Shown piece by piece: positions 97 through 41,777 of a stretch of DNA of 45,039 bases. Source of the DNA: Octopus sinensis (taxonomy: Eukaryota); contig NW_021834807.1 in assembly GCF_006345805.1 (NCBI RefSeq), positions 1 to 45,039 of the forward strand. Direction: 5' to 3'. The first letter of the stretch is position 1; each line of letters begins with the position of its first letter. The translations under genes and the position numbers were made by a program. Under the pieces are notes generated by a model. It was not told the origin of the DNA. It saw only the letters and a list, made by a program, of their open reading frames with translations, and did not search any database.

Positions 97-1021
97 TCAT
101 CATCATCATCATTATCGTTTAACATCCACTTTCCATGCTAATATAGGTTGGACGATTTGACTGAGGACTGGCGAACCAGATGGCTGCACCAAACTCCAAT
201 TTTAATCTGGCAGATTTTCTACAGCTGGATGCCCTTCCTAACACCAACCACTCTGAGAGTGTAGTGGGTGCTTTTACGTACCAACTGCATGATGACCAGT
301 CAGGCGGTACTGGCAACGGCCACGCTCAAATAGTATTTTTTTACATGCCACCTGCACAGGAGCCAGTCCAGTGGCACTGGCAACGACCTCCATCAAATGT
401 TTTTCACGTGCCACCGGCATAAGTGCCAGTAAGGTGACGCTGGTAATGATCATGCTTGGATGGTGCTCTTAGCACTCCACTAGCACGGTGCCAGTCATCG
501 AATTTGATTTCAATTTCACTTGCCTCAACAGGTCTTCGCAAGCAGAGTTTAGTGTCCAATGAAGGAAAGGTACGCATAAGTGGGCTGGTTACACCCCTGG
601 CATAGGCCATGAGGTTATGGTCTCATTTGGCTTGCCGGGTCTTCTCAAGCACAGCATATTTCCAAAGGTCTCGGTCTTTAGTCATTACCTCGGTGAGGCC
701 TAATGTTCGAAGGTCGTGCTTCACCAGTTCATCCCAGGTCTTCCTGGGTCTACCTCTTCCACAGGTTCCCTCAACCGCTAGGGTGTGACACTTTTTCGCA
801 CAGCTATCCTCATCCATTCTTGCTACATGACCTTTCCAGCGCAGTTGTCTCTCATGCACACTACATCTGATGCTTCTCAGGTCCAACTTTTCTCTCAAGG
901 TACTTACACTCTGTTGAGTATGCACACTGACATTACACATCCATCGGATCATACTGGCTTCATTCATTGCAAGCTTACGCATGTCCTCAGCAGTCACGGC
1001 CCATGTTTCACTGCCATGCAT
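97..1021 (-). mobile_element. RTE-clade LINE 3' fragment (ORF2 C-terminus, 3' UTR, (GAT)n tail)
   Basis: ORF 623-1021 (HGSETWAVT...[10 protein letters not shown]...GRGRPRKTW...DRDLW) is a typical RTE post-RT region; trinucleotide tail at 97-115. Confidence 0.88.
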
Positions 1022-1044
1022 CCTCTTCCAAATAAATTTTATCT

Positions 1045-1656: not shown

Positions 1657-3930
1657 AGTACCACTGATGCTATTTTCCTGGTAAGGCAGCTGCAGGAGAA
1701 ATACCTAGCCAAAGATAGCCCCTGTACCTGGCTTTCGTTGACATGGAGAAAGCTTTGATAGGGTCCCCCGATCCCTTATCTGGTGGTCATGAGGAAACTA
1801 GGGATAGATGAATGGCTGGTGAGGACTGTGCAAGCCATGTACACAGATGCCGTAAGTAAGGTTAGGGTTGGCAACATGTACACAGAAGAATTCAAAGTAG
1901 AGGTTGGGGTCCACCAGGGTTCAGTACTCAGCCCCCTCCTATTTATCATAGTACTCCCAGGCAATTACGGAGGAATTCAAGACAGGCTGTCCCTGGGAGC
2001 TCCTCTACCACTGACGACCTTGCTCTTATTGCTGAGTCACTATCAGAACTGGAGGAGAAGTTCCAGGTGTGGAAGGAGGGTTTAGAATCAAGGACCTTAG
2101 AGTCAACCTAGCTAAAACCAAAGTACTAATAAGTAGAAAGGTAGACAATCCACAAATATCTTCAGGAAGATGGCCCTGCTCGATCTGTAGAAAGGTGTAG
2201 GTAGAAACTCTATAAGATGTACCCAGTGTAAGCTATGGACACATAAGAGGTGCAGCAATGTCAAAGGTAGGCTAACTGGGAAGATAGTTTTTGTATGTGG
2301 CAGATGCTTGGGAGCATTGACCTCCGAAAATCTGCAGAAAACAACTTCCGTCACTTTCCAGGGGGAAAACTAGAAGTAGTTGATAGCTTCCGTTATCTAG
2401 GTGACCAAGTCAGTAGTGGGGGTGGGTGCGCTGAAAGTGTAACTGCTAGAATAAGAATAGCCTGGGCAAAGTTTAGGGAGCTCTTACCTCTGCTGGTGAC
2501 TAAAGGCCTCTCGCTCAGAGTAAAAGGCAGACTGTATGATGCGTGTGTACGAACAGCCATGCTACATGGCAGCGAAACATGGGCCGTGACTGCTGAGGAC
2601 ATGCGTAAGCTCGTGAGGAATGAAGCCAGTATGCTCCGATGGATGTGTAATTTCAGTGTACATACTCGACAGAGTGTTAGCACCTTGAGAGAAATGTTGT
2701 ACCTAAGAAGCATCAGTTGTGGTGTGCAAGAGAGACGATTGCGCTGGTATGGTCATGTGGCGAGAATGGATGAAGTTAGGTGTGTGAGAAAGTGCCAATC
2801 CCTAGCAGTTGAGGGAACCCGTGGAAGGTAGACCCAGGAAAACCTGGGATGAGGTGGTGAAGCACGACCTTCGAACTTTAGGCCTCACTGAGGAAATGAC
2901 CAGCGACCGAGACCTTTGGAAATATTCTGTACGTGAGAAGACCAGGCAGGACAAGTGAGCCCAGCCCACTTATGAATGCCTTTCCTCCCTTGGACACAAA
3001 GACCTGTTGAGGCAAGCGAAGTCGATATAGAACCTCATCCGACGACAGACACCCATGCCAACCTCCCATGCTTGCGAAGACATGTTGGGGCAAGCGAAAT
3101 CGAAATCGAAACTGAATTGAACCAGCCAGGATCCCTGGCCTGGTGGTACGTAAAAAGCACTATCCGACTCGTGGCCGTGGCACGTAAAATACTCCAATGC
3201 GACCGTACGACAGGCACCCATGCCAACCCCCTTTGCTTGTGAAGACATGTTGGGGCAAGCGAAATCGAAATCGAATTGAACCAGCCAGGATCCCTGGTCT
3301 GGTGGTACGTAAAAAGCACTGTCCGACTCGTGGCCGTGGCACGTAAAATACTCCAATGCGACCGTACGACAGGCACCCATGCCAACCCCCTTTGCTTGTG
3401 AAGACATGTTGGGGCAAGCGAAATCGAAATCGAATTGAACCAGCCAGGATCCCTGGTCTGGTGGTACGTAAAAAGCACTGTCCGACTCGTGGCCGTGGCA
3501 CGTAAAATACTCCAATGCGACCGTACGACAGGCACCCATGCCAACCCCCTTTGCTGTGAAGACATGTTGGGGCAAGCGAATCGAAATCGAATTGAACCAG
3601 CCAGGATCCCTGGTCTGGTGGTACGTAAAAAGCCTATCCGACTCGTGGCCGATGCCAGCACCGCCTCGACTGGCTTCCTGCCGTGGGCACATAAAATACA
3701 CCAATCTGACCTGGCCGTTGCCAGCCCCGCCTGGCACCTTGCAGGTGGCACATAAAAAGCACCCACTACACTCACGGAGTGGTTGGGCGTTAGGAAGGGC
3801 ATCCAGCTGTAGAAACATTGCCAGATTAGACGGAGCCTGGTGCAGCCTTCTGGCTTCCCAGAACCCCGGTCGAACCGTCCAACCCATGCTAGCATGGAGA
3901 ATGGACGTAAACGACGATGATGATGATGAG
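1657..3930 (+). mobile_element. 5'-truncated, frameshifted RTE-clade LINE (RT domain through 3' UTR and (GAT)n tail)
   Basis: RT motifs FVDMEKAFDRVP, GVHQGSVLSPLLF, degraded YADD, FRYLG, then LHGSETW and LRWYGHVARM, split across frames by indels; tail gatgatgatg near 3915-3930. Confidence 0.92.
3076..3620 (+). repeat. 159-bp tandem repeat (about 3.4 copies) inside the RTE 3' UTR
   Basis: gaagacatgttggggcaagcg recurs at 3076, 3241, 3400 and 3558. Confidence 0.9.
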
Positions 3931-31205: not shown

Positions 31206-31888
31206 TGATTGCCATTCTATATTTAGATGCCTAATACCTACGACACATCTAAACAATAACAACATTTCCATTTCTTTAAAAAATTTCCCATTTTTTTTTT
31301 GTCTTCGTTTTTCCTCCGTTGACCACATTCGCTACAACATTCGTAACAAGATACGAAATTCCGTGGAGGTTTGTTGTGTTAACACCTAATTTCATCCACA
31401 TTGATTGTGTTATGTTGATAATTCTCGGTGTTGTTAGCTCCATTTCGGTTTCTAAGTGGTTCCTAAATGGCTTTGTACTTTTCCAAAAATAGTTGTTATA
31501 CAATAAATGCATAAAAATAGCAATTTATGAATGTTCTCTTTCCGTTTTATACGTTTATTCCCTTGTTAATGCTAAGGTATTTAAAAATTGTGTAAAGAGA
31601 ACTACATTGGTTAATTAGCGTATGACTTAATTACTTTTATACAATTTCGTATTAACATGACTTTTTTTTTAGATGTTATTTTTATTATTTGATAATGATT
31701 TCTCAACAAATAGTCACAAGCTTGGCTGTGTGGTAAGAAGTTTGCTTCCCAACCACATGGTACCAGGTTCAGTCCCACTGCGTGACACCTTGGGCAAGTC
31801 TTGGGCCAACCAAAGCCTTATTAGTGGATTTGGTAGTTGGAAATTGAAAGAAGCTCATCAAATATACATATTCATATATATATATATA

Positions 31889-32577
31889 TTTAAATAATGA
31901 GGGAGATAAATTAATATTAATTTTAATATCAATTTAAAACCAGTAGTCCAGCATACAAAAAATCTGAGAAATCAGAGAAAATTCTAATACATGTGTATAT
32001 TGTCAGGGCAAGACTGCTAGGTAGTCAGCCGTATGCTAGAAATAGATCATCAACATGTATTAGAATCTTCTCTGATTTTTCAGATTTTTTGTATGCTAGA
32101 CTACTGGTTTTAAATTTATATTAAAATTAATATTAATTTATCTCCCTCATTATTTAAATATTGAAATACGTTCTCTAGTAGCAAGCACTAACCGCAGTGA
32201 ATTATTTACTGCAGTTCTTCGCTTCAGGAATTTTTTAGCGTGCCGGAACTAAGACATTTGAAATTTTATCCCTAATGTTATTGGTAAAACTAAACACGCG
32301 TCTGTTTCGGCACAGAAAGCTGGGGTTAGTTTTTCAGATTGCATTTACACTGAACGATTGTACTGATGAGGCCACGGACATTTGAATTATGTAAGTAATT
32401 CTTTTGTTAAAGGCCGAAACCGAGGTATGCAATTAATTACGTTTTTTATATAAATTTTCATCTGTCCTGCCCGCCAAATTTGGTTCTGGTGTTCGCTGAA
32501 TCTTTCTTTGTAGTTTGATCGTTGATGATCTATTTCTAGCATACGGCCGACTACCTAGCAGTCTTGCCCTGACAATT
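31889..32577 (+). mobile_element. Non-autonomous PLE/retrozyme-like element with inverted 5' duplication
   Basis: A (31889-31995), B (31996-32054), inverted A (32055-32160), unique core containing a hammerhead, inverted B (32521-32577). Confidence 0.7.
32357..32433 (+). ncRNA. Canonical type I hammerhead ribozyme, predicted cleavage GUA^ after 32427
   Basis: Stem I ATTGTA/TGCAAT; CTGATGA 32363-32369; helix II GGCC (32370-73)/GGCC (32412-15); GAAAC 32416-20; loop CGAG; GTA 32425-27. All conserved core positions are intact. Confidence 0.85.
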
Positions 32578-33204
32578 TTGCTTTCACAGGAAGGAAAGTT
32601 TCTTGTCGAAGATACGTCTCGCTTTCACCTTCGAAACGTATAGAGAGATGAAACCATAGCGACTGAAGAGGGGTTTTTTCTTTGTGTTACTTGTCCTGTA
32701 CTCTATTTTTTGTTGTTTAAAAAAATGTCCAGTTCCTGGGTTTGTGTCTATGTTTTCGTTTCTCACTGTGTTCGACGTCCTTTGGGGTGTCCTGTACTCA
32801 TATATGCGTGTATATGTACATGTAGAGGTAGGTACGTACATATATGTTATATATATGCATATGTTTTATTTATTAATATATATAATATATATATATATAT
32901 AATATATAGGGGTGTAAGAGTGGATGTGTGGTAAGTAGCTTGCTTAACAACCACTGGTTCCAGGTTCAGTCCCACTGCGTGGCACCTTGGGCAAGTCTCC
33001 TACTATAGCCTCTCCAAGCACTGCTATAAACAGTGGAAATGAGCTAGAACATTAAAAACTTAGTGCACATGAACTGCAGAGTTCAAGGTCACCCTGTGCC
33101 AAGTAGCTTCACTCTGCATGCTTTAGCTTCGTTACTATGGCAACAGTCCGGATACTTATAGATCAGACCTTGTAGACACACACATGCATCAGGCTTCTTT
33201 CAGT

Positions 33205-34366: not shown

Positions 34367-34472
34367 GTCCCAATGGTAGTTTGGTTGATGACTCTTTCTA
34401 TCCACGCGTTTTACTTCTCATGCATAAATGGTTTATACCATCTCAGGAACTGGCAGAACGTCTCGTAGAATT
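34367..34472 (+). CDS. RASGRP: RasGRP exon B: (C)PNGSLVDDSFYPRVLLLMHKWFIPSQELAERLVE(L)
   Basis: Acceptor ttttctcttctttcAG ends at 34366; 106 nt, phase 1 to phase 2. Closely matches the RASGRP3-type REM segment as I recall it (NGEL..SY.PR.VLLMHRWY.SS.ELAEKL). Confidence 0.92.
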
Positions 34473-40995: not shown

Positions 40996-41606
40996 AGATC
41001 AGTGTTTTGCAACCATTTTTCACTTGCGGTACCCTTGTATTCCTTTCAAAATTTGGTAGCACACCTGAAATAAAACTATAATTAAATGTATGGGGAAAAA
41101 AAGTTATATTCAGGTTACACTGAGGCACACCTAGCATTGCCTTGTGGCACACCTGTGTGCTGTGGTATTCTGGTTTGCAGAGCACTGTTGTAGATCCAGA
41201 GGCAGTTTCAGGTGAGGTGGTATCAATAAGGTTGAACCAAAAAGGTTCCGGGTTCAGTCCCGTTGCATGGCACCTTGAGCAAGTGTCTTCTACTATAGCC
41301 TCGGGCCGACCAAAGCCTTGTGAGTGGATCTGGTAGATGGAAACTAAAAGAAGCCCATTGTATATTTATATGTGTGTGTGTGTATGTGTATGCATGAATG
41401 TTGGTGCTGTTACCTATGTGGAAAATACTATCTGCAAGTATCATAATTTTATTTCAACTGGTACAGTACCAGTTGCGTACTGTGGTCAACATAATCAATT
41501 TATTCCTCCCCCAAAATTACTGGCTTTGTACCAAAATTTGAAACTATTATCTTAATCTCATGCTTACCTGTCATTTCATTGAAGTTCTGTTTTGTCTTTT
41601 ATTTAG

Positions 41607-41738
41607 ATACTGGATCCGAACATTTCCTTTCCACTTTGACCTCGACAAACGGTTAAAAGTAATCGTGGAAAGATTTGGTCAAATTCTTGAAGCAGAAGGC
41701 AATACCAATTTTTCTGAATTAATCGATCTTTCTAAAGT
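41607..41738 (+). CDS. RASGRP: RasGRP exon D: (R)YWIRTFPFHFDLDKRLKVIVERFGQILEAEGNTNFSELIDLSK(V)
   Basis: Acceptor ttttgtcttttatttAG ends at 41606; donor GT|GTAAGT at 41739; 132 nt, phase 2-2. Matches the RasGRP pattern RYWI..FP..F.LD..L.....F........LID.S. Confidence 0.92.
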
Positions 41739-41777
41739 GTAAGTGAACAAATAATTTATCATATTTTGTGTAAATAT

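What the first reader, a model, noticed from the sequence alone, without database searches (positions are those of the whole stretch)
32357..32433. Fully intact hammerhead ribozyme on the sense strand of a RasGRP intron
Seen: every conserved core nucleotide is present (CUGAUGA, G10.1-C11.1, GAAA, GUA^). Stem I is 6-7 bp. Helix II is elaborated: GGCC/GGCC, GACA/UGUU, then GAAUUAU/GUAAUUC capped by a GUAA (GNRA) tetraloop. That tetraloop region also spells a perfect GTAAGT donor at 32391. The motif lies in intron A-B, about 1.9 kb before exon B, in the transcribed orientation. Established: type I hammerheads with a very short helix III are typical of Penelope-like elements and retrozymes and usually cleave well only as dimers. 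Inference: it could cut the nascent RasGRP pre-mRNA, slowly or in trans-dimers, or belong to a recently active element.
Basis: partly seen in the sequence, partly recalled or inferred. Interest (0 to 1): 0.85.

Follow-up and report, generated by a model that had tools for sequence, protein, structure and literature searches.

The report
Hammerhead motif inside a repeated retroelement
The hammerhead ribozyme motif is really there and complete, but it is one of several hundred copies carried by a short non-coding Penelope-type retroelement that landed in a (TA)n repeat inside the RasGRP intron, so it is an ordinary mobile-element feature and probably not a RasGRP regulator.

Summary
Observation confirmed. 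Window 32357-32433 (+) has every hammerhead core nucleotide, a 6-7 bp stem I, a 4-bp helix II with a long GUAA-capped extension, and a 2-bp helix III. Cleavage would fall after A32427. My descriptor hits the window once and hit none of 400 shuffles.

Interpretation partly supported. The motif is not specific to RasGRP. It lies in a ~524-545-bp non-coding unit (32053-32576, 35% GC) of a dispersed repeat. The genome holds at least 208 copies of this lineage's ribozyme 3' half and at least 265 of a sister lineage's.

The 66 mapped copies show Penelope-like-element insertion hallmarks:
- scattered 5' truncation;
- head-to-tail partial tandems of up to 3.3-5 units;
- an inverted 3'-terminal fragment at the 5' end (window 31886-32054);
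- insertion into (TA)n.

Two compensatory pair changes and an invariant core across lineages 12% apart argue the fold was selected. However, over 90% of copies have A10.1 opposite C11.1. Only the youngest subfamily, which includes this copy, is canonical. Rfam does not reach threshold. No copy starts at the cleavage site. In-context folding favours a competing hairpin by 3-8 kcal/mol.

Catalysis and any effect on RasGRP are untested. I rate it a new member of a known kind, of modest interest.

The parts
31862..31888 (.). (TA)n-rich remnant of the target microsatellite at the 5' edge of the insertion
   Evidence: Read. Nearly all of the 66 mapped copies are flanked by (TA)n or (CA)n.
31886..31994 (-). 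Inverted fragment: the first 109 nt of the unit, ending in the element's alternative 3' terminus ...ATTTAAATAT
   Evidence: BLAST map, (q1-109, 96%). Arm of a 116-nt, 94% inverted repeat paired with 32053-32168.
31999..32054 (-). Inverted fragment: the last 56 nt of the unit. With the previous part it forms the inverted 5'-truncated copy typical of Penelope-like insertions.
   Evidence: 98% complementary to 32521-32576. The same arrangement occurs at other loci.
32053..32576 (+). One full unit of the non-coding repeat. It is 524 bp here and 542 bp in the subfamily majority sequence, because this copy has 4-nt and 15-nt deletions. It ends in the 3' terminus ...CCCTGACAAT.
   Evidence: GC is 34.9% and the longest ORF in a dimer of the unit is 56 aa.
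32357..32433 (+). Type-I hammerhead motif. Core CUGAUGA is 32363-69, helix II is 32370-32415, GAAA is 32416-19 and helix III is 32419-26. The predicted cleavage site is 32427/32428.
   Evidence: All 77 nt match the youngest subfamily's majority sequence.
32434..32475 (+). Downstream segment predicted to pair with 32377-32400 in a competing hairpin that excludes helix II and stem I
   Evidence: The hammerhead-constrained fold is 3-8 kcal/mol above the MFE once this segment is included.
34367..34470 (+). RasGRP-like exon (REM / RasGEF_N region), about 1.93 kb downstream. The 3' boundary is approximate.

Best explanation
The motif is the hammerhead of a roughly 545-bp non-coding retroelement. The element is a non-autonomous derivative of Penelope-like elements (PLEs), of the kind called a metazoan non-LTR retrozyme. 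This copy inserted fairly recently into a (TA)n microsatellite that happens to lie in a RasGRP intron, in the sense orientation.

Shown here:
- The family is dispersed in hundreds of copies.
- Copies are 5'-truncated at scattered positions.
- Copies end at one of two fixed 3' termini.
- Copies form head-to-tail partial tandems.
- Copies often carry an inverted 3'-terminal fragment at their 5' end.
- The hammerhead lies 143 nt upstream of the nearer 3' terminus, on the strand that serves as the RNA template.

Inferred:
- An endonuclease-positive PLE of the same genome copies the element RNA by target-primed reverse transcription at nicked (TA)n.
- The hammerhead serves the element, not the host. 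In transcripts that contain two or more units, two motifs can pair through the quasi-palindromic ACCGAGGU helix III. They would then cleave after A17 and release unit-length RNAs with 5'-OH and 2',3'-cyclic phosphate ends. A tRNA ligase could circularise these RNAs.
- The stable alternative fold then keeps monomers uncleaved.
- In this single-motif intronic copy, cleavage of the RasGRP pre-mRNA is expected to be slow or negligible and without a selected host function.
For: Repeat family:
- Copies are 95-99% identical over 201 nt.
- The ribozyme 3' half has 208 copies at up to 2 mismatches, against 0 for the control.
- The unit's 3'-terminal 28-mer has 864 copies.
- The sister lineage has 239 and 265 exact half-motifs.

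PLE-type architecture:
- Maps of 66 copies show scattered 5' ends and two fixed 3' ends.
- Inverted pieces always start with a 3' terminus.
- (TA)n lies on both flanks.
- Tandems run to 3.3 units (L031) and 5 units.
- These are the hallmarks listed in PMC8557442.

Other fits:
- The unit is non-coding with 35% GC, as described for retrozymes in PMC7229834.
- The genome holds at least 4846 GIY-YIG candidates, many with open frames of 781 aa or more.

Selection on the fold:
- 95.5% of cells are paired, against 26-42% for slid controls.
- Pair 2.5-1.5 is U-A in 28 sequences and A-U in 15. Pair 10.3-11.3 is C-G in 33 and U-A in 2. The U-A state is the consensus of the sister lineage.
- No core nucleotide differs between the lineage consensus sequences, which are 12% apart.
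- Eight random substitutions would leave the motif intact with P of about 7e-4.

Dimer option: an intermolecular ACCGAGGU duplex is predicted at -8.6 kcal/mol.
Against: - No cleavage or circular-RNA data exist.
- Over 90% of family copies have A10.1 opposite C11.1, or a 1-nt deletion in helix II. The lineages that amplified most therefore lack the canonical pair that PMC4209133 calls highly conserved.
- None of 66 copies begins at the cleavage site.
- Rfam models stay far below threshold.
- In context, the active fold is 3-8 kcal/mol less stable than a competitor.
- No autonomous partner sharing the 3' end was identified.
- Most copies have fewer than two units, unlike the long arrays of classic retrozymes.
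Confidence: 0.75

Rival explanations
1. Relic motif. The hammerhead-like sequence is inherited baggage with little or no catalytic activity. The element multiplies without it, and the canonical look of this copy's subfamily results from one fortuitous A-to-G change.
For: - A10.1 opposite C11.1 is the consensus of every lineage except the youngest.
- 10 of 88 copies also lack a helix II base.
- No 5' ends fall at the cleavage site.
- Rfam is sub-threshold.
- A competing fold is favoured in context.
- PMC8557442 notes that PLE clades without hammerheads proliferate well.
- PMC4209133 found low in vitro activity for PLE hammerheads.
Against: - Two double-sided compensatory changes and several wobble-compatible ones keep stems I and II paired across 12% divergence.
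- All core positions are invariant between the lineage consensus sequences.
- The remaining changes fall on N7, the N of the GNRA loop and internal loops.
- The latest change restores the canonical pair instead of breaking it.
Confidence: 0.18
2. Host-acting intronic ribozyme. This particular copy cuts the nascent RasGRP pre-mRNA and tunes its expression, an exaptation like the conserved intronic hammerheads of amniotes.
For: The copy is in the sense orientation in a RasGRP-like gene, with a fully canonical core. All 77 nt match the subfamily majority sequence even though the copy is 2.5% diverged overall.
Against: - Zero changes in 77 nt is unremarkable at 2.5% divergence, where about 2 are expected.
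- Dozens of equally canonical copies lie elsewhere.
- There is no second motif within 45 kb for dimer formation.
- The insertion is young.
- The competing fold is favoured in context.
- In Xenopus about 43% of retrozyme copies overlap introns (bioRxiv 10.64898/2026.07.22.740005), so an intronic location is commonplace.
Confidence: 0.04
3. The repeat is not a retroelement. It would be a foldback or MITE-type DNA transposon, or a satellite spread by recombination, and the motif would be incidental.
For: The window shows long inverted repeats of 116 and 56 nt, and tandem arrays exist.
Against: - The inverted pieces vary in length from copy to copy and always begin with the element's 3' terminus. 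Many copies have none.
- 5' ends are scattered while 3' ends are fixed.
- Copies are dispersed on all chromosomes in microsatellites.
Confidence: 0.03

Closest known systems
Metazoan non-LTR retrozymes (Cervera and de la Pena 2020, PMC7229834; Li et al. 2026 preprint 10.64898/2026.07.22.740005)
   Same: - Non-coding, AT-rich unit carrying one type-I hammerhead with a short helix III.
- Head-to-tail repeats.
- Co-occurrence with PLEs.
- The unit length of about 545 bp lies within the 51-972 bp reported in the preprint.
   Different: - Most copies here are single or partial units dispersed in microsatellites. The longest arrays seen have 5 units.
- The unit is longer than the 170-400 nt typical of invertebrates.
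- Helix II carries a 36-nt extension.
- Most copies have A10.1 opposite C11.1.
- Circular RNA was not tested.
Hammerheads in the pseudo-LTRs of Penelope-like elements, and non-autonomous PLE derivatives (PMC4209133, PMC8557442)
   Same: - Insertion anatomy: 5' truncation, partial tandems, an inverted 5' copy and a microsatellite target.
- A hammerhead near the 3' end with a quasi-palindromic helix III that allows dimers.
   Different: - No RT / GIY-YIG ORF in the unit.
- Stem I (6-7 bp) and helix III (2 bp plus tetraloop) are 'canonical metazoan' in form, not the minimal PLE form.
[quoted passage not shown]
- Similarity to an autonomous PLE 3' end was not shown.
Schistosoma Sm-alpha, newt satellite 2 and Dolichopoda pDo500 hammerhead repeats (cited in PMC4209133 and PMC2837043; otherwise my own knowledge)
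   Same: Type-I hammerheads embedded in short, repeated, transcribed, non-coding units. A weak helix III suggests action as dimers.
   Different: Those are mostly long satellite arrays or SINE-like elements in other phyla. There is no sequence relationship, and the insertion pattern differs.
Conserved intronic hammerheads of amniotes (Rfam HH9 and HH10; from my own knowledge, not tested here)
   Same: A sense-strand hammerhead inside an intron of a protein-coding gene.
   Different: Those are single-copy and ultraconserved at orthologous sites. This one is a young copy of a multi-copy repeat.

Membership tests
Hammerhead ribozyme, type I | Conserved core CUGANGA ... GAAA ... with A15.1-U16.1 and H17 at the cleavage site | tested here: met
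   The core is invariant between the lineage consensus sequences.
Hammerhead ribozyme, type I | Three helices around the core, with stem I open and helices II and III closed | tested here: met
   Stems I and II are in the MFE of the isolated motif. 95.5% of cells are paired across 49 distinct copies, with 3 pairs showing double-sided change. The 2-bp helix III is not predicted thermodynamically, as is usual for this class.
Hammerhead ribozyme, type I | G10.1-C11.1 pair at the base of helix II | tested here: met
   Met in the window copy and in 26 of 88 anchored copies. Not met in the other copies (A opposite C) or in the sister lineage.
Hammerhead ribozyme, type I | Score at or above the curated Rfam gathering threshold (RF00163 / RF00008 clan) | tested here: not met
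   No hit at gathering score. The best is 15.3 bits against 48.5, truncated, E = 0.53. The 30-nt insertion in loop II of that alignment accounts for part of the loss.
Hammerhead ribozyme, type I | Site-specific self-cleavage giving 5'-OH and 2',3'-cyclic phosphate ends | not testable with these tools
   Needs in vitro transcription or RNA end mapping.
Hammerhead ribozyme, type I | Tertiary contact between loop 1 and loop 2 | tested here: inconclusive
   Helix II has an internal loop (ACG/AAA) where loop 2 would sit. A possible 3'-side bulge (UAAUUA) follows stem I. No covariation or model was available.
Metazoan non-LTR retrozyme | Non-coding, low-GC unit of a few hundred bp carrying one type-I hammerhead, found as head-to-tail repeats | tested here: met
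   GC is 34.9% and the longest ORF is 56 aa. Tandems have a period of 541-546 bp and up to 3.3-5 units. Most copies, however, have fewer than 2 units.
Metazoan non-LTR retrozyme | Expression as unit-length linear and circular RNA | not testable with these tools
   No transcriptome was available.
Non-autonomous Penelope-like element | PLE insertion anatomy: frequent 5' truncation, partial tandems (pseudo-LTR), an adjacent inverted 5'-truncated copy and a microsatellite target bias | tested here: met
   66 copies mapped and compared with the description in PMC8557442.
Non-autonomous Penelope-like element | Autonomous PLEs (RT plus GIY-YIG) present in the same genome | tested here: met
   At least 4846 first-look candidates. 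149 of the 150 scored matched, all above the PF01541 cut-off, with open frames up to 883 aa.
Non-autonomous Penelope-like element | 3'-terminal sequence shared with a specific autonomous PLE family | not tested
   Loci could no longer be fetched.
Conserved host intronic hammerhead (HH9/HH10 type) | Single-copy locus conserved at the orthologous intron across species | tested here: not met
   The single-copy criterion fails, with hundreds of paralogous copies. Orthologous conservation could not be tested because no other cephalopod genome was available.

The most novel reading that the evidence does not exclude
The family offers a natural allelic series for the hammerhead core. Every older and larger lineage has A10.1 opposite C11.1. 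The youngest subfamily differs at 10.1 by one A-to-G change that makes the core canonical. One locus restores pairing the other way, as A10.1-U11.1.

If that single nucleotide changes cleavage rate and the balance of linear, circular and copied RNA, it would directly test what the hammerhead does for Penelope-type elements. It might be an attenuated ribozyme tuned so that templates survive. That question is still open (PMC8557442).

A weaker variant of this reading is that the canonical copy in the RasGRP intron measurably truncates the pre-mRNA.
Probability: 0.15. Interest if true: 0.55.

Novelty: new member of a known kind. Interest (0 to 1): 0.3.

Why it matters
For RasGRP it probably does not matter. 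An intronic copy of a mobile element that brings its own ribozyme is commonplace.

The finding is still useful in three ways:
- Annotation. A cephalopod repeat family of several hundred copies carries a hammerhead that Rfam thresholds miss, apparently in part because of the helix II extension, so genome-wide ribozyme counts in cephalopods are underestimates. I found no paper in the searchable library that describes such a family in cephalopods.
- Element biology. The clean succession of subfamilies, with compensatory changes and a late gain of the canonical G10.1-C11.1 pair, is a tidy system for asking whether ribozyme activity matters to Penelope-type retroelements.
- Host RNA. The insertion also places a 116-bp near-perfect hairpin in the pre-mRNA of a neuronal signalling gene, in a lineage known for heavy RNA editing.

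Tried and rejected
- Chance motif. Rejected by the descriptor test with shuffles and by the pattern of changes across the family.
- 5' ends set by ribozyme cleavage. I expected a pile-up of copy starts at unit position 376. None of 66 copies starts there. Three canonical-subfamily copies start at 365-371, upstream of the site, which fits reverse transcriptase stalling at the foot of helix II better.
- Reading the A after A9 as the unpaired nucleotide typical of PLE min-hammerheads (PMC4209133). The register then breaks the next pair, so this was rejected.
- The flanking repeat 32577-32800 as part of the element. Only one other locus (L035) has it nearby, so it was rejected.
- MITE or foldback reading of the inverted repeats. 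Rejected because the arms vary between copies and always start at a 3' terminus.
- Relationship to the Rfam-detectable hammerheads of this genome (L049-L068). There is no BLAST similarity to the unit.
- Finding the autonomous partner. The GIY-YIG search listed many PLE ORFs, none adjacent to a family copy, but no more DNA could be fetched.
- Tandem Repeats Finder cannot report the 546-bp array because its longest period is 500. BLAST maps were used instead.
- Verifying the upstream exon A. The candidate at about 23.8 kb has no PDB match.

Full report
THE OBSERVATION

- Stem I: ATTGTA with TGCAAT, plus a seventh G-U pair.
- Core CUGAUGA: 32363-69.
- Helix II: opens with GGCC/GGCC and continues through two internal loops into GACA/UGUU and GAAUUAU/GUAAUUC, capped by GUAA.
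- GAAA: 32416-19.
- Helix III: 2 bp (A-U, C-G) with loop CGAG.
- A17: 32427.

The isolated 77-mer folds with stems I and II in the minimum-energy structure (-19.5 kcal/mol, z = -2.56).

I wrote a type-I descriptor and ran it on both strands of the window. It finds this site and no other, and it found nothing in 400 dinucleotide shuffles. My rough analytic estimate is about four chance hits per 2.7-Gb genome.

Rfam does not recognise the motif. There is nothing at gathering score and nothing in an 801-nt scan at E up to 10. On 101 nt there is only a truncated 15.3-bit Hammerhead_3 alignment, against a cut-off of 48.5 bits, which shows a 30-nt insertion in loop II.

GENE CONTEXT

A + strand ORF follows a polypyrimidine tract and an AG at 34365-66. 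It aligns to RasGRP2 residues 33-64 (PDB 6axf, E = 4.5e-4; RasGEF_N 17.4 bits, below cut-off). A second + strand piece at about 41.57-41.74 kb aligns to residues 79-126 (E = 1.1e-6).

The motif is therefore on the sense strand, 1.93 kb upstream of that exon. Because the exon starts in mid-domain, an upstream coding exon must exist, so an intronic position is likely. The candidate near 23.8 kb could not be confirmed.

THE MOTIF IS NOT UNIQUE

A 201-nt query around the motif finds copies 95-99% identical all over the genome. A 3.2-kb query shows that the repeated part is window 32053-32576, which other loci match as a unit of 540-546 bp.

Whole-genome pattern counts:
- Ribozyme 3' half: 208 copies at up to 2 mismatches, control 0.
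- Full 5' half with exact anchors: 88 copies.
- The unit's first-segment 28-mer, which also forms one of the 3' termini: 864 copies.

A sister lineage is 12% diverged and has the same organisation. It contributes 239 exact 5' halves and 265 exact 3' halves.

The unit is 34.9% G+C, and its longest ORF, even in a dimer of the unit, is 56 aa.

INSERTION ANATOMY

I mapped 66 copies with flanks:
- 5' ends are scattered along the unit. There are minor clusters at positions 1-7, 178-184 and 450-459.
- 3' ends fall at two fixed places. One is ...CCCTGCCAAT(ATAC) at unit position 524. The other is ...ATTTAAATAT at position 109 of a following partial unit.
- Many copies are partial tandems. Locus L031 has 0.3 + 3 + 0.2 units. 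The sister lineage reaches five units at 541-546-bp spacing.
- About 27 of the 66 copies carry an inverted fragment at their 5' end. It always begins with one of the two 3' termini.
- Almost every copy sits in (TA)n or, less often, (CA)n, on both flanks.

The window copy follows this plan:
- (TA)n at 31862-88.
- An inverted fragment made of the last 56 nt plus the first 109 nt of the unit, at 31886-32054 on the minus strand.
- One full unit on the plus strand, ending at 32576.

Frequent 5' truncation, partial tandems that form pseudo-LTRs, an adjacent inverted 5'-truncated copy and a microsatellite target are the features Craig et al. list for Penelope-like elements. They also describe non-autonomous derivatives with multicopy head-to-tail insertions (PMC8557442).

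Type-I hammerheads in short non-coding AT-rich tandem units are the 'non-LTR retrozymes' of PMC7229834. A 2026 preprint argues that these are non-autonomous PLE sequences, reports consensus lengths of 51-972 bp, and finds about 43% of copies overlapping introns in Xenopus.

The same genome has at least 4846 GIY-YIG candidates. Of the 150 scored, 149 matched, all above the Pfam cut-off, and many have open frames of 781 aa or more. Autonomous PLEs are therefore available.

WAS THE HAMMERHEAD FOLD SELECTED?

A tree of 44 units shows a ladder of subfamilies running from the sister lineage O through M2/M3, M1 and Y2 to the youngest, Y1. The window copy belongs to Y1. It is 2.5% from the Y1 majority sequence, and its 77-nt motif is identical to that sequence.

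Along this ladder:
- Pair 2.5-1.5 of stem I switches from A-U to U-A.
- Pair 10.3-11.3 of helix II switches from U-A to C-G.
- Pair 2.2-1.2 alternates between U-G and C-G.
- The remaining differences fall on N7, on the N of the GNRA loop (GCAA to GUAA) and in internal loops.
- No core nucleotide differs between the lineage consensus sequences.

On 49 distinct copies, 95.5% of cells are paired, against 26-42% when partners are slid. Three pairs have changes on both sides. Eight random substitutions in the 77-mer would leave the core and all pairs intact with a probability of about 7e-4. With two or more compensatory doubles as well, the probability is about 6e-5. This argues that the structure mattered in the master copies.

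WHAT SPEAKS AGAINST A ROBUST RIBOZYME

- Every lineage except Y1 has A at 10.1 opposite C11.1. Of the 88 anchored copies, 26 are canonical (GGCC), 36 are AGCC, 10 have AGC with a 1-nt deletion, and 7 have broken cores. The large sister lineage is uniformly AGUC/GACC. The canonical pair is thus a late, derived A-to-G change. One sister-lineage locus instead has A10.1-U11.1.
- PMC4209133 calls G10.1-C11.1 highly conserved in PLE hammerheads. It also reports low in vitro activity for such motifs.
- No copy starts at the cleavage site. Three Y1 copies start 5-11 nt upstream of it, at the foot of helix II.
- With natural flanks the predicted minimum-energy structure pairs 32377-32400 with 32434-32475. 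The hammerhead-constrained fold is then 3-8 kcal/mol higher. Co-transcriptional folding and tertiary contacts are not modelled.
- The window holds one motif only. Such a dimer is otherwise plausible, with an ACCGAGGU self-duplex predicted at -8.6 kcal/mol.

VERDICT

The motif is the hammerhead of a Penelope-type non-autonomous (retrozyme-like) retroelement, and this copy is a fairly young insertion into an intronic microsatellite.

Its most likely role is in processing the element's own multimeric transcripts. A role in RasGRP expression is unsupported.

It is a new member of a known kind. The one feature worth following up is the subfamily series in which the core pair 10.1-11.1 goes from a mismatch to the canonical G-C.

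The Y1 majority sequence was computed only to measure divergence and is not reproduced here.

Noticed in passing
window 31879-31994 with 32053-32168, and 31999-32054 with 32521-32576: The insertion creates a 116-nt inverted repeat (94% complementary) with a 58-nt loop, and a second 56-nt repeat (98%). Over 729 nt the fold is -257 kcal/mol, z = -14.6. In the pre-mRNA this is a long double-stranded RNA and a plausible substrate for A-to-I editing. The two helices cross, so they cannot both form fully.
   Followed up: partly
window 31718-31801 and 32916-32998: Two direct copies (82-95% identical) of a short repeat whose sequence looks like a tRNA-derived SINE head (GGTTCAGTCCCACTGCG...). They bracket the region, and similar pieces occur many times elsewhere in the window.
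   Followed up: no
window 32577-32800: A different repeat directly follows the element's 3' end where (TA)n would be expected. The (TA)-rich tract resumes at about 32840-32905. The same repeat lies 240 nt from another copy of the element at G000:C6:111745319-111745654 (91% identical). It may be a later insertion into the same microsatellite.
   Followed up: partly
G000 genome-wide; L049-L068: Rfam Hammerhead_1 finds other, unrelated hammerheads in this genome: 8 over cut-off among 74 scored candidates.
- One sits in each unit of a 431-bp x 2.0 tandem next to (TA)n (L054).
- Another has roughly a 60-nt insertion in helix II (L065).
Long helix II arms are therefore not unique to the family studied here.
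   Followed up: partly
G000:C3:19290636-19291515: Three units of the sister lineage at one locus read GACT-GAAA. C11.1 has become U, which restores a Watson-Crick pair with A10.1 by the opposite route to the window's subfamily.
   Followed up: no
G000 genome-wide: There are at least 4846 GIY-YIG candidates. Dozens share an identical score of 31.4 bits, and several of these have 781-aa open frames. This looks like a young, high-copy autonomous Penelope-like family.
   Followed up: no
window 626-1042 (-) and 1762-2828 (+): ORFs with reverse-transcriptase-like text (for example ...[15 protein letters not shown]...RPRKTWDE...) on both strands suggest fragments of a LINE-type element. This was judged by eye only.
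   Followed up: no
window 41542-41739 (+): A further RasGRP-like exon aligns to RasGRP2 residues 79-126 (E = 1.1e-6). The intron between this exon and the one at 34.4 kb is about 7 kb.
   Followed up: partly
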